Shown: in pieces, positions 53,995 to 54,560 of the stretch
Numbering within the stretch: position 1 is the first letter of the stretch
Layout: every line of letters begins with the position of its first letter
Assembly (NCBI RefSeq): GCF_001194135.2
Contig: NC_069010.1
Span: 9,491,436 to 9,555,435 of the forward strand
Source of the DNA: Octopus bimaculoides
Lineage: Eukaryota
DNA: 64,000 bases
Direction: 5' to 3'
Program-made: the position numbers and the translations under genes
The notes under the pieces: model-generated
Databases searched by the model: none
Seen by the model: the letters and a program-made list of their open reading frames with translations, nothing else
Told to the model about the DNA's origin: nothing

Positions 53995-54560
53995 AGGATA
54001 TATATCTGAACATCCAAAATATATTATTGCAACAGCGCAAGGGTCTCAAAACTGGAAAAGTGGGTTTCACTAGAAATTACTACTTTGTTGTCCCCACCTT
54101 GGAGTGCGCTAATTAAGTTAATGGGAAAGGAGTTGCTTTGGCTGAGTACATCGCGGTATAGAGGTAAGGAGTTAATTTCCAAAAGTGACCCACTTGGCAC
54201 ATGCATTTTCTCTGATCATGAGACAGGTGGTTCATTTTGCCTGTTCTGGGTTCGAGACTAGCTCGAGACTGTCGAGTTCACCCCAGGACCTCCAGTCGTT
54301 CACTTTACTAGTGAAAATTCCGTGTCCTTTAAACTGGAGGGCTGGCACCAGCTTTACTGAATGGAATTTAGGGTTCTTCTCCTGCTCCGAGCTATCAAGA
54401 GAGCACTTCAGGATAGTTGGTGCCATCAGCTGTCCTAAGGGAGAATATCTATCATTTCATAAATTCCGAAGATCGAAGCCAGTAACTACATCCCGGGGGC
54501 CTCCAGTATTTCGCTTTAGCGGACGGACTTGTGCGTTCTTCTCCTGCGGGTGCCAGCTGT
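53995..54560 (-). repeat. 28S-rRNA-like repeat family, copy B (best rRNA similarity)
   Basis: Reverse strand: agtaaagtgaacgactggaggtcctggggtgaa…ctagtctcgaac…aatgcatgtgccaagtgggtcacttttgg. Tail caataatatattttggatgttcagatata is shared with copy C. Confidence 0.75.

What the first reader, a model, noticed from the sequence alone, without database searches (positions are those of the whole stretch)
53995..54560. Repeat family built around a degenerate 28S rRNA segment
Seen (- strand): CTAGTAAAGTGAACGACTGGAGGTCCTGGGGTGAA…CTAGTCTCGAAC…(about 50 nt)…AATGCATGTGCCAAGTGGGTCACTTTTGG. Established conserved eukaryotic LSU sequence (recalled): GGTAAAGCGAATGATTAGAGG…GGGG..GAAA…CCTATTCTCAAAC…GAATG…GTGCC.AGTGGGCCA.TTTTGG, preceded by TTTCCCTCAGGATAGC (domain II, around the helix-38 A-site finger). 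Order and spacing are colinear. The CCCTCAGGATAG and GTAAAGCGAA motifs recur 2-3 times within copies, and all four copies share a non-rRNA tail ending …tattttggatgttcagatat. Inference: a mobile family (SINE-like, or LINE 3'UTR) that captured and internally amplified an rRNA segment. I do not recognise such a family from cephalopods.
Basis: partly seen in the sequence, partly recalled or inferred. Interest (0 to 1): 0.75.

Follow-up and report, generated by a model that had tools for sequence, protein, structure and literature searches.

The report
Decayed 28S rRNA fragment, locally multiplied
A roughly 600-base non-coding unit made of two partial copies of one stretch of large-subunit ribosomal RNA plus an unrelated tail occurs five times in a single 7.6-kb neighbourhood; the rRNA origin is real, but nothing here shows that it is a jumping element rather than an old rRNA pseudogene copied locally.

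Summary
A profile of 59 eukaryotic LSU rRNA segments hits the window only at these repeats: 38.4, 24.3 and 14.1 bits, against at most 5.6 bits in 200 shuffled windows. All hits are on the sense strand and map to one LSU stretch, about positions 965-1150 of the 3401-position Rfam model (domain II). Rfam/Infernal itself reports no LSU match, even on the best module alone.

Each full unit is module A (LSU about 965-1075), module B (about 965-1150) and a roughly 200-nt non-rRNA tail ending TATTTTGGATGTTCAGATAT. A shared A-to-G change at a near-invariant LSU site points to one capture.

There are five copies in two mirror-image arrays: M1 and M2 on the minus strand, and P1, P2 and Y on the plus strand. 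No other copy lies in the 64 kb. Old copies are 63-75% alike. The outer 423 nt of the two arrays, including 215 nt beyond the unit, are 97% identical.

I found no tRNA, 5S or 7SL head, no poly(A), no convincing target-site duplications and no reverse-transcriptase ORF. rRNA helices are decaying.

I lean towards local tandem and inverted duplication (about 0.5) over a dispersed SINE-like family (about 0.37). The host genome could not be searched, so genome-wide copy number remains untested.

The parts
53998..54583 (-). Module A is about 54583-54483, an extra start motif lies near 54447, module B is 54370-54176 and the tail is 54175-53998.
   Evidence: The unit profile matches 54574-54000 at E=3.6e-150. 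LSU profile hits are E=2e-12 for module B and 0.013 for module A. Sequence read.
53380..53997 (-). Copy M2, a full unit that abuts M1 head-to-tail with only TAT between them. Module A is about 53997-53850, module B about 53843-53600 and the tail 53600-53380, ending in the variant TATTTTCGATGTCCAGATAT.
   Evidence: The unit profile matches 53996-53392 at E=6e-174. Alignment. M2 is 74.5% identical to P2.
53165..53379 (-). 'ext-M': about 200 nt of sequence unrelated to the unit that follows M2, plus (TG)n at 53179-53165. With M2's tail it forms the 97% identical inverted pair 53165-53585 / 60783-60361.
   Evidence: (I3, I8). There is no other match in the window.
58990..59439 (+). Copy P1, lacking about the first 90 unit positions. 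Module B is 59076-59259 and the tail 59260-59439, with the exact end motif. An unrelated old repeat (58602-58888) lies just upstream.
   Evidence: The unit profile matches positions 91-582 at E=1.3e-124. The full LSU profile gives E=0.077.
59440..59867 (+). A 428-nt spacer between P1's 3' end and P2's 5' start. It is unrelated to the unit, to ext, to M1's upstream flank or to anything else in the window.
   Evidence: alignment scores at shuffle level.
59868..60340 (+). Copy P2, with a full 5' end. Module A is 59887-59990, CCCTCAGGATAGT lies at 60012-60024, module B is 60030-60233, and the tail (60234-60340) is cut short.
   Evidence: The unit profile matches positions 4-498 at E=8.8e-144. LSU profile hits are E=3.5e-8 and 4e-5.
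60341..60560 (+). Copy Y, a tail-only partial unit joined directly to P2's truncated tail.
   Evidence: The unit profile matches positions 351-581 at E=2.7e-59. Y is 82% identical to P2's tail and 97% to M2's tail.
60561..60790 (+). 'ext-P', the counterpart of ext-M, ending in (GT)n at 60770-60790. Homology between the two arrays stops at the microsatellite.
   Evidence: no similarity in the flanks beyond the microsatellites.

Best explanation
This is a non-coding, decaying relic. One fragment of 28S rRNA (domain II, about 185 nt, Rfam LSU model about 965-1150) was captured once into non-rDNA sequence. It was partly duplicated internally, giving modules A and B. Together with about 200 nt of adjoining unrelated sequence it became a unit of about 600 bp.

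In this window the unit was multiplied by local DNA-level events:
- a tandem duplication, giving M1-M2 and P1-P2;
- an inverted duplication, giving two head-to-head arrays about 4.3 kb apart;
- a partial tail duplication, giving Y;
- a recent copy or gene conversion of the outer 423 nt, now 97% identical.

The rRNA-like part has no retained rRNA function and its helices are eroding.

Shown: the rRNA homology, the module architecture, the single origin, the confinement of copies to one neighbourhood, the mirror order and the recent 423-nt copy.

Inferred: how the fragment was captured (cDNA or filler DNA at a break), and the order and mechanism of the duplications.
For: - rRNA homology is significant and restricted to one LSU stretch.
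- All modules share G where 57 of 59 eukaryotic LSU references have A (CTATTCTCAAAC), which indicates one capture.
- The unit profile finds copies only at 53392-54574 and 58990-60556, and nowhere else in 64 kb. A truly dispersed family in the same window has at least 17 scattered copies.
- From the centre outward the two arrays have the same order: unit 1, unit 2, ext, microsatellite.
- In the multiple alignment M1-P1 (66.1%) and M2-P2 (74.5%) are the closest cross-array pairs. Other pairs are 63-64.5%. M1-P1 stands out only within the error, and only in this alignment.
- The 97% tract carries 215 nt of non-unit sequence and ends at a (TG)n run in both arrays.
- Only 48-67% of LSU base pairs can still form in the modules, against 89% in a real LSU and 30-49% in slid controls.
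- No Pfam domain was found in any ORF tested at 53-62.5 kb.
Against: - Homology stops sharply at the same unit ends in independent contexts. P1's 3' end and P2's 5' start coincide with the M1|M2 junction to within 3 nt, yet are separated by 428 nt of unrelated DNA. A local-duplication history therefore needs an insertion or deletion exactly at the junction.
- The copies share a 3' end, and two of them (P1, Y) lack 5' parts. That is the pattern expected from target-primed reverse transcription.
- Inner flanks show no clear homology. M1-upstream versus P1-upstream is marginal at best: z=2.7, with 6 of 300 shuffles reaching the observed score.
- BLAST identities do not single out M1-P1: 61.7% against 60-63% for other M1 pairs.
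- A 64-kb window cannot show absence from the rest of the genome.
Confidence: 0.5

Rival explanations
1. The unit belongs to a dispersed, old, non-autonomous retroposon family (SINE-like in size). Its head derives from an internal 28S rRNA segment, perhaps created when a LINE reverse transcriptase switched template from a tail RNA onto abundant 28S rRNA. A LINE that recognises the about 200-nt tail would mobilise it. The AT-rich 3' end (…CAGATATATAT) would attract further insertions, giving tandem pairs. Y plus ext would be a 5'-truncated offspring of M2 carrying a 3' transduction.
For: - Unit termini are discrete and recur in different sequence contexts.
- The copies share a 3' end, and P1 and Y are 5'-truncated.
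- Flanks show no clear homology apart from ext.
- M2 and P2 form a subfamily-like pair against M1 and P1.
- The unit length of about 600 nt is in SINE range.
- A 28S-derived SINE has a precedent in mammals: SINE28 (PMC4994717, listed in the review PMC10946416).
Against: - All five copies sit within 7.6 kb and none lies in the other roughly 50 kb.
- The arrays have a mirror-image order.
- There is no tRNA, 5S or 7SL similarity.
- Each copy has 2-7 runs of four or more T on the sense strand, which would stop Pol III.
- There is no poly(A) or A-rich end.
- No significant target-site duplication or start-like motif was found at junctions.
- The tail has no conserved stem-loop; the consensus fold is -1 kcal/mol.
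- No LINE or reverse-transcriptase ORF, and no tail-only copy, is present in the window.
- The one recent copy landed 7 kb away inside another copy, which fits recombination better than retrotransposition.
Confidence: 0.37
2. The 97% identical inverted 423-nt ends (53165-53585 and 60361-60783) are the terminal inverted repeats of one large DNA transposon or foldback element spanning 53165-60783. The rRNA-like units would be its subterminal repeats.
For: A long inverted terminal pair with subterminal degenerate repeats is the layout seen in foldback-type elements.
Against: - There is no transposase or any Pfam domain in the ORFs tested inside.
- No similarity or duplication is visible in the sequence just outside the ends.
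- The ends are plain (TG)n microsatellites of different lengths.
- The interior is ordinary microsatellite-rich non-coding DNA with an assembly gap.
Confidence: 0.04
3. The resemblance to rRNA is chance or compositional, as the silence of Rfam might suggest.
For: cmscan reports no LSU match at E<=10, even on the best module alone.
Against: - Three modules score 14-38 bits, against a maximum of 5.6 bits in 200 shuffled windows.
- The hits are colinear, sense-strand only and all to the same 185-nt LSU stretch.
- BLASTN against single LSU genes gives E=2e-7.
Confidence: 0.01

Closest known systems
Dispersed rRNA pseudogene fragments (rDNA 'orphons'; Robicheau et al. 2017, cited in PMC10946416)
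   Same: A piece of 28S sequence lies outside the rDNA array. It is non-functional, decays neutrally and can be duplicated with its surroundings.
   Different: This one is very old, about 62% identical to the LSU consensus. It is internally duplicated, fused to a fixed non-rRNA tail, and present as five copies with recurring ends.
SINE28, the mammalian LSU-derived SINE (Longo et al. 2015, PMC4994717)
   Same: It is a short repeat whose body comes from 28S rRNA, and the only 28S-derived transposable element listed in the 2024 rDNA/TE review.
   Different: [quoted passage not shown] The unit here comes from domain II (model about 965-1150 of 3401), is heavily diverged, is interrupted by T runs, and is not shown to be dispersed.
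Chimeric retrocopies made by LINE template switching (small RNA or rRNA piece fused to another RNA's 3' part; from my own knowledge of the L1 literature, not checked here)
   Same: The layout matches: an rRNA piece in sense orientation at the 5' side and unrelated sequence at the 3' side. This is a plausible way the first unit arose.
   Different: Such chimeras normally end in poly(A) and have target-site duplications. Neither is visible here.
rDNA-specific non-LTR retrotransposons and their non-autonomous derivatives (R2, R1, R9, SIDEs; PMC5035012, PMC3414825)
   Same: They are associated with 28S sequence, and non-autonomous short derivatives exist.
   Different: Those elements sit inside functional rDNA at other 28S sites and carry, or derive from, a reverse-transcriptase ORF and ribozyme. 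Here there is no rDNA context, no ORF and no ribozyme hit.

Membership tests
Eukaryotic LSU rRNA-derived sequence (RF02543) | Reaches Rfam's covariance-model threshold for LSU_rRNA_eukarya | tested here: not met
   There was no LSU hit at gathering threshold or at E<=10 on the whole window, on 3.5 kb, on 461 nt, or on the best 203-nt module alone. As a control, a real LSU stretch of 271 nt scores 285 bits.
Eukaryotic LSU rRNA-derived sequence (RF02543) | Significant, colinear, sense-strand sequence similarity to real LSU genes | tested here: met
   nhmmer E-values are 2e-12, 3.5e-8 and 4e-5, with a shuffle maximum of 5.6 bits against 38.4 observed. BLASTN gives E=2e-7. All hits map to LSU model about 965-1150.
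Eukaryotic LSU rRNA-derived sequence (RF02543) | rRNA helices maintained (functional rRNA) | tested here: not met
   48-67% of the LSU pairs that could be scored in each module (6-49 of 65) can still form, against 89% in a real LSU and 30-49% in slid controls.
SINE | Length about 80-700 nt, non-coding | tested here: met
   Full units are about 590-620 nt. Their ORFs have no Pfam domain.
SINE | Head derived from tRNA, 7SL, 5S or snRNA with an internal Pol III promoter | tested here: not met
   ARAGORN finds no tRNA-like sequence. Rfam at E<=10 gives no tRNA, 5S, 7SL or snRNA hit in 52500-56000. The head is 28S domain II, and each copy has 2-7 runs of T4 or longer.
SINE | 3' end with poly(A), a microsatellite, or a tail shared with a partner LINE | tested here: inconclusive
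   There is no A-run at the 3' end. No LINE or reverse-transcriptase ORF and no tail-only copy lies in the window. A partner LINE elsewhere in the genome cannot be searched.
SINE | Target-site duplications flanking individual copies | tested here: inconclusive
   None is recognisable by eye. Junction similarity tests give p=0.1-0.9. Copies this old could have lost them.
SINE | Many copies dispersed at unlinked sites | not testable with these tools
   Within the window all copies lie in 7.6 kb. The host genome is absent from the protein and contig collections. The tail motif has 0 hits in prokaryotic and viral contigs.
SINE28 | [quoted passage not shown] | tested here: not met
   The hits map to model positions about 965-1150 of 3401 only. 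The SINE28 definition is from PMC4994717.
rDNA-specific non-LTR element (R2-like) or derivative | Inserted in an rRNA gene, with a reverse-transcriptase ORF or ribozyme remnants | tested here: not met
   There is no rRNA gene in the window, no LSU similarity outside the 185-nt stretch, no Pfam domain in the ORFs tested, and no ribozyme hit.
Local segmental (tandem and inverted) duplication | Copies adjacent or nearby, in the same order in both arms, carrying non-unit flank | tested here: met
   M1-M2-ext mirrors P1-P2(-Y)-ext. The 215-nt ext is shared at 97%.
Local segmental (tandem and inverted) duplication | Corresponding units are each other's closest relatives | tested here: inconclusive
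   In MAFFT, M2-P2 is 74.5% and M1-P1 66.1%, against 63-64.5% for other pairs. In BLAST, M1-P1 is 61.7%, no better than other pairs.

The most novel reading that the evidence does not exclude
This is a cephalopod (or at least molluscan) non-autonomous retroposon family whose head was recruited from an internal domain-II segment of 28S rRNA. No described SINE uses that source. The family would tend to insert next to its own AT-rich 3' end, building tandem and inverted clusters.
Probability: 0.33. Interest if true: 0.5.

Novelty: new member of a known kind. Interest (0 to 1): 0.3.

Why it matters
As it stands, it matters little. rRNA fragments outside the rDNA and their local duplication are known, and this one is old and decaying.

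It has practical value for annotation. The repeat is invisible to Rfam/Infernal and would be left as 'Unknown' or mis-scored by repeat maskers.

It would gain interest if the whole-genome search shows a dispersed family. That would add a second, independent case of a 28S-derived non-autonomous element, taken from a different part of the rRNA and from a different phylum than SINE28. It would bear on how abundant cellular RNAs are recruited into new retroposons.

Tried and rejected
- **Rfam cmscan, four searches of the window.** No LSU hit. Only spurious miRNA-type hits on microsatellites and palindromes.
- **Tail as diverged downstream LSU.** By eye, CCACGAT…CAACTCC…ATTAACTTAGC resembled LSU beyond position 1150. 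nhmmer of the five tails against a full LSU profile gave nothing even at E<=1000, so I rejected this.
- **Start-like motif or 16-20-nt target-site duplication after each unit 3' end, including around the 428-nt spacer.** Not significant, p=0.1-0.9. Rejected.
- **11-nt terminal inverted repeat (CCTGAATTTCC / GGATGTTCAGA, 8 of 11).** Judged by eye only. The 5' half is itself rRNA-derived. Not pursued.
- **Conserved hairpin in the tail.** The consensus fold is -1 kcal/mol.
- **Reaching the host genome.**
  - ORFs from the repeat gave no homologue and no exact record.
  - A receptor exon found only two relatives, 75% and 67% identical.
  - The 20-kb loci around the closer relative share no repeats with the window and hold no copy of the unit.
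  - Reverse-transcriptase relatives of those contigs include entries labelled as a Thiodiazotropha metagenome-assembled genome. That genus, to my knowledge, is a lucinid-clam symbiont, so the relative may be a bivalve. I stopped sampling there.
- **Tail motif in prokaryotic and viral contig collections and in full-text papers.** 0 hits.
- **Literature.** I found no report of an rRNA-derived repeat in cephalopods.
- **R9-type long target duplication as the origin of modules A and B.** I could not obtain the paper. No LSU sequence beyond position 1150 is present anywhere in the window, so I dropped the idea.
- **Not used.** The single search of protein representatives, because the expected yield was very low given the negative protein look-ups.

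Full report
**What is there**

Self-comparison shows this interval is one of five related copies arranged in two arrays.
- On the minus strand, M1 (54583-53998) abuts M2 (53997-53380), with only TAT between them.
- M2 is followed by about 200 nt of unrelated sequence ('ext') and a (TG)n run ending at 53165.
- On the plus strand, P1 (58990-59439) lacks about the first 90 positions of the unit.
- P1 is followed by a 428-nt unrelated spacer (59440-59867).
- Next comes P2 (59868-60340), which has a complete 5' end but a shortened tail.
- Then comes Y (60341-60560), a tail-only piece, followed by the same ext and a (GT)n run ending about 60790.

The two arrays are head-to-head, with their 5' ends facing each other across 4.3 kb of microsatellite-rich non-coding DNA. 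That DNA contains an assembly gap.

A profile built from the five copies finds nothing else in the 64 kb. A different, truly dispersed repeat family has at least 17 scattered copies in the same window.

**Is the rRNA resemblance real?**

It gives no LSU match at the gathering threshold or at E<=10. That holds on the window, on 3.5 kb, on 461 nt and on the best 203-nt module alone.

I therefore fetched real eukaryotic LSU genes from metagenome contigs. Two were confirmed as complete LSU genes by Rfam. I built nhmmer profiles from them.
- The 59-sequence segment profile hits the window only inside the repeats: 54370-54176(-) at 38.4 bits (E=2e-12), 60030-60233(+) at 24.3 bits (3.5e-8), 59887-59990(+) at 14.1 bits (4e-5) and 54578-54483(-) at 5.8 bits (0.013). 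All are colinear, in sense orientation, and map to the same profile columns.
- A full-length LSU profile hits only that same stretch and adds P1 weakly.
- BLASTN against single LSU genes gives E=2e-7.
- In 200 block-shuffled windows the best score was 5.6 bits. The reversed window gave nothing.

Mapped through a real LSU segment onto the Rfam model, the stretch is about positions 965-1150 of 3401. It runs from GAAGUUUCCCUCAGGAUAGC to CCACUUUUGG.

One caveat applies. My references were selected by one exact 21-mer, so those columns are artificially sharp. The shuffle control shows that the result does not depend on this.

**Architecture and origin**

Each full unit has three parts.
- Module A corresponds to LSU about 965-1075.
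- Module B is the same LSU stretch started again, about 965-1150. One or two extra CCCTCAGGATAG-like starts lie between A and B.
- The tail is about 200 nt and ends …AATAATATATTTTGGATGTTCAGATAT.

The tail gives no LSU match even at E<=1000 in a tiny search space. It has no conserved fold.

Every module that keeps the site has G in TCTC(G)AAC or CTA(G)AAC, where 57 of 59 eukaryotic LSU references have CTATTCTCAAAC. All modules and copies therefore descend from one captured fragment. The A/B duplication predates the copies.

Only 48-67% of LSU base pairs can still form in the modules. The figure is 89% in a real LSU and 30-49% in slid controls. The helices are eroding rather than being maintained.

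**Mobile family or local duplication?**

For mobility:
- Homology ends at the same unit termini in different contexts. P1's 3' end and P2's 5' start match the M1|M2 junction to within 3 nt, although 428 nt of unrelated DNA separates them.
- The copies share a 3' end, while P1 and Y lack 5' parts.
- Flanks show no clear homology except ext. M1-upstream versus P1-upstream is marginal: z=2.7, with 6 of 300 shuffles reaching the observed score.

Against mobility:
- All five copies lie within 7.6 kb.
- From the centre outward the two arrays have the same order: unit 1, unit 2, ext, microsatellite.
- In the multiple alignment the corresponding units are each other's closest cross-array relatives. 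M2-P2 is 74.5% and M1-P1 66.1%, against 63-64.5% for the other pairs. For M1-P1 this is within the error, and BLAST does not show it.
- The only recent event is a 423-nt tract that is 97.2% identical between the arrays. It starts inside the tail, carries 215 nt of non-unit sequence and stops at a (TG)n run on both sides. That is what gene conversion or break repair templated by the nearby inverted copy would leave.

SINE hallmarks are missing:
- There is no tRNA, 5S or 7SL similarity.
- Each copy has 2-7 runs of T4 or longer.
- There is no poly(A).
- There are no significant target-site duplications.
- There is no reverse transcriptase or any Pfam domain in neighbouring ORFs.

I put local tandem plus inverted duplication of a single old rRNA-containing segment at about 0.5. 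I put a dispersed non-autonomous retroposon family at about 0.37. The local history needs one coincidence, an indel exactly at a unit junction. The mobile history needs strong clustering or homing.

**What could not be tested**

- ORFs from the repeat have no homologue or exact record.
- A Cys-loop receptor exon from the window finds only two relatives, 75% and 67% identical.
- The contigs of the closer relative share no repeats with the window and hold no copy of the unit.
- Those contigs may be bivalve, judging by the labels of related reverse transcriptases.
- The tail motif is absent from the prokaryotic and viral collections and from full-text papers.

**Comparison with known things**

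The closest ordinary category is a dispersed rRNA pseudogene fragment that was duplicated with its surroundings.

The closest transposable element is mammalian SINE28. It is the only 28S-derived element listed in a 2024 review of rDNA and transposable elements. [quoted passage not shown] The defining feature I could test, its LSU region, is not met here.

rDNA-specific R elements are excluded. There is no rDNA context, no ORF and no ribozyme.

I found no report of an rRNA-derived repeat in cephalopod repeat surveys.

**Verdict**

The 'mobile SINE-like family' reading is unproven and slightly disfavoured by what the window shows.

Interest is modest at 0.3. It would rise to about 0.5 if a whole-genome search shows dispersal.

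Noticed in passing
window 15551-23395 (- strand): These are exons of a Cys-loop ligand-gated ion channel gene. Neur_chan_LBD matches at 22916-23395 and 18814-19248, and Neur_chan_memb at 15551-16231. The nearest searchable relative of one exon is only 75% identical.
   Followed up: partly
window 61167-61498, 13018-13378, 62299-62624, 1951-2099, 9332-9478, 19663-19814, 46204-46388 and others: An abundant interspersed repeat of about 150-330 nt has at least 17 copies, 70-87% identical, on both strands across the window. I used it as a yardstick for what a dispersed family looks like here. It was not classified.
   Followed up: partly
window 55350-55649: A long foldback lies between the two rRNA-like arrays. 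Its inner arms are 55413-55487 / 55513-55587 (75 nt, 88% complementary) and its outer arms 55350-55423 / 55576-55649 (78%). It is flanked by (TA)n runs and produces spurious Rfam miRNA-type hits.
   Followed up: partly
window 58602-58888 and 17967-18245: An old repeat pair, 71% identical and in opposite orientation. The first copy lies just upstream of the truncated 5' end of P1 and may be why P1 lacks its start.
   Followed up: no
window 53372-53395 and 60553-60576: Right at the unit's 3' end in M2 and Y the sequence forms a perfect 8-bp inverted repeat, CCAGATAT-(9 nt)-ATATCTGG. Its significance is unknown.
   Followed up: no
window 1214-1618 (+): An open frame contains ...[22 protein letters not shown]..., which by eye resembles a PP-loop ATPase motif of the kind found in tRNA thiolation proteins. 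Pfam gave no hit at E<=0.01 on the whole frame.
   Followed up: partly
window 9374-10230, 40497-41197, 49159-49859 and other N runs (7515 N in total): Large N-filled scaffold gaps generate artificial 'repeats' and long X-filled ORFs in the mechanical tools. One gap, 58178-58279, lies between the two arrays.
   Followed up: no
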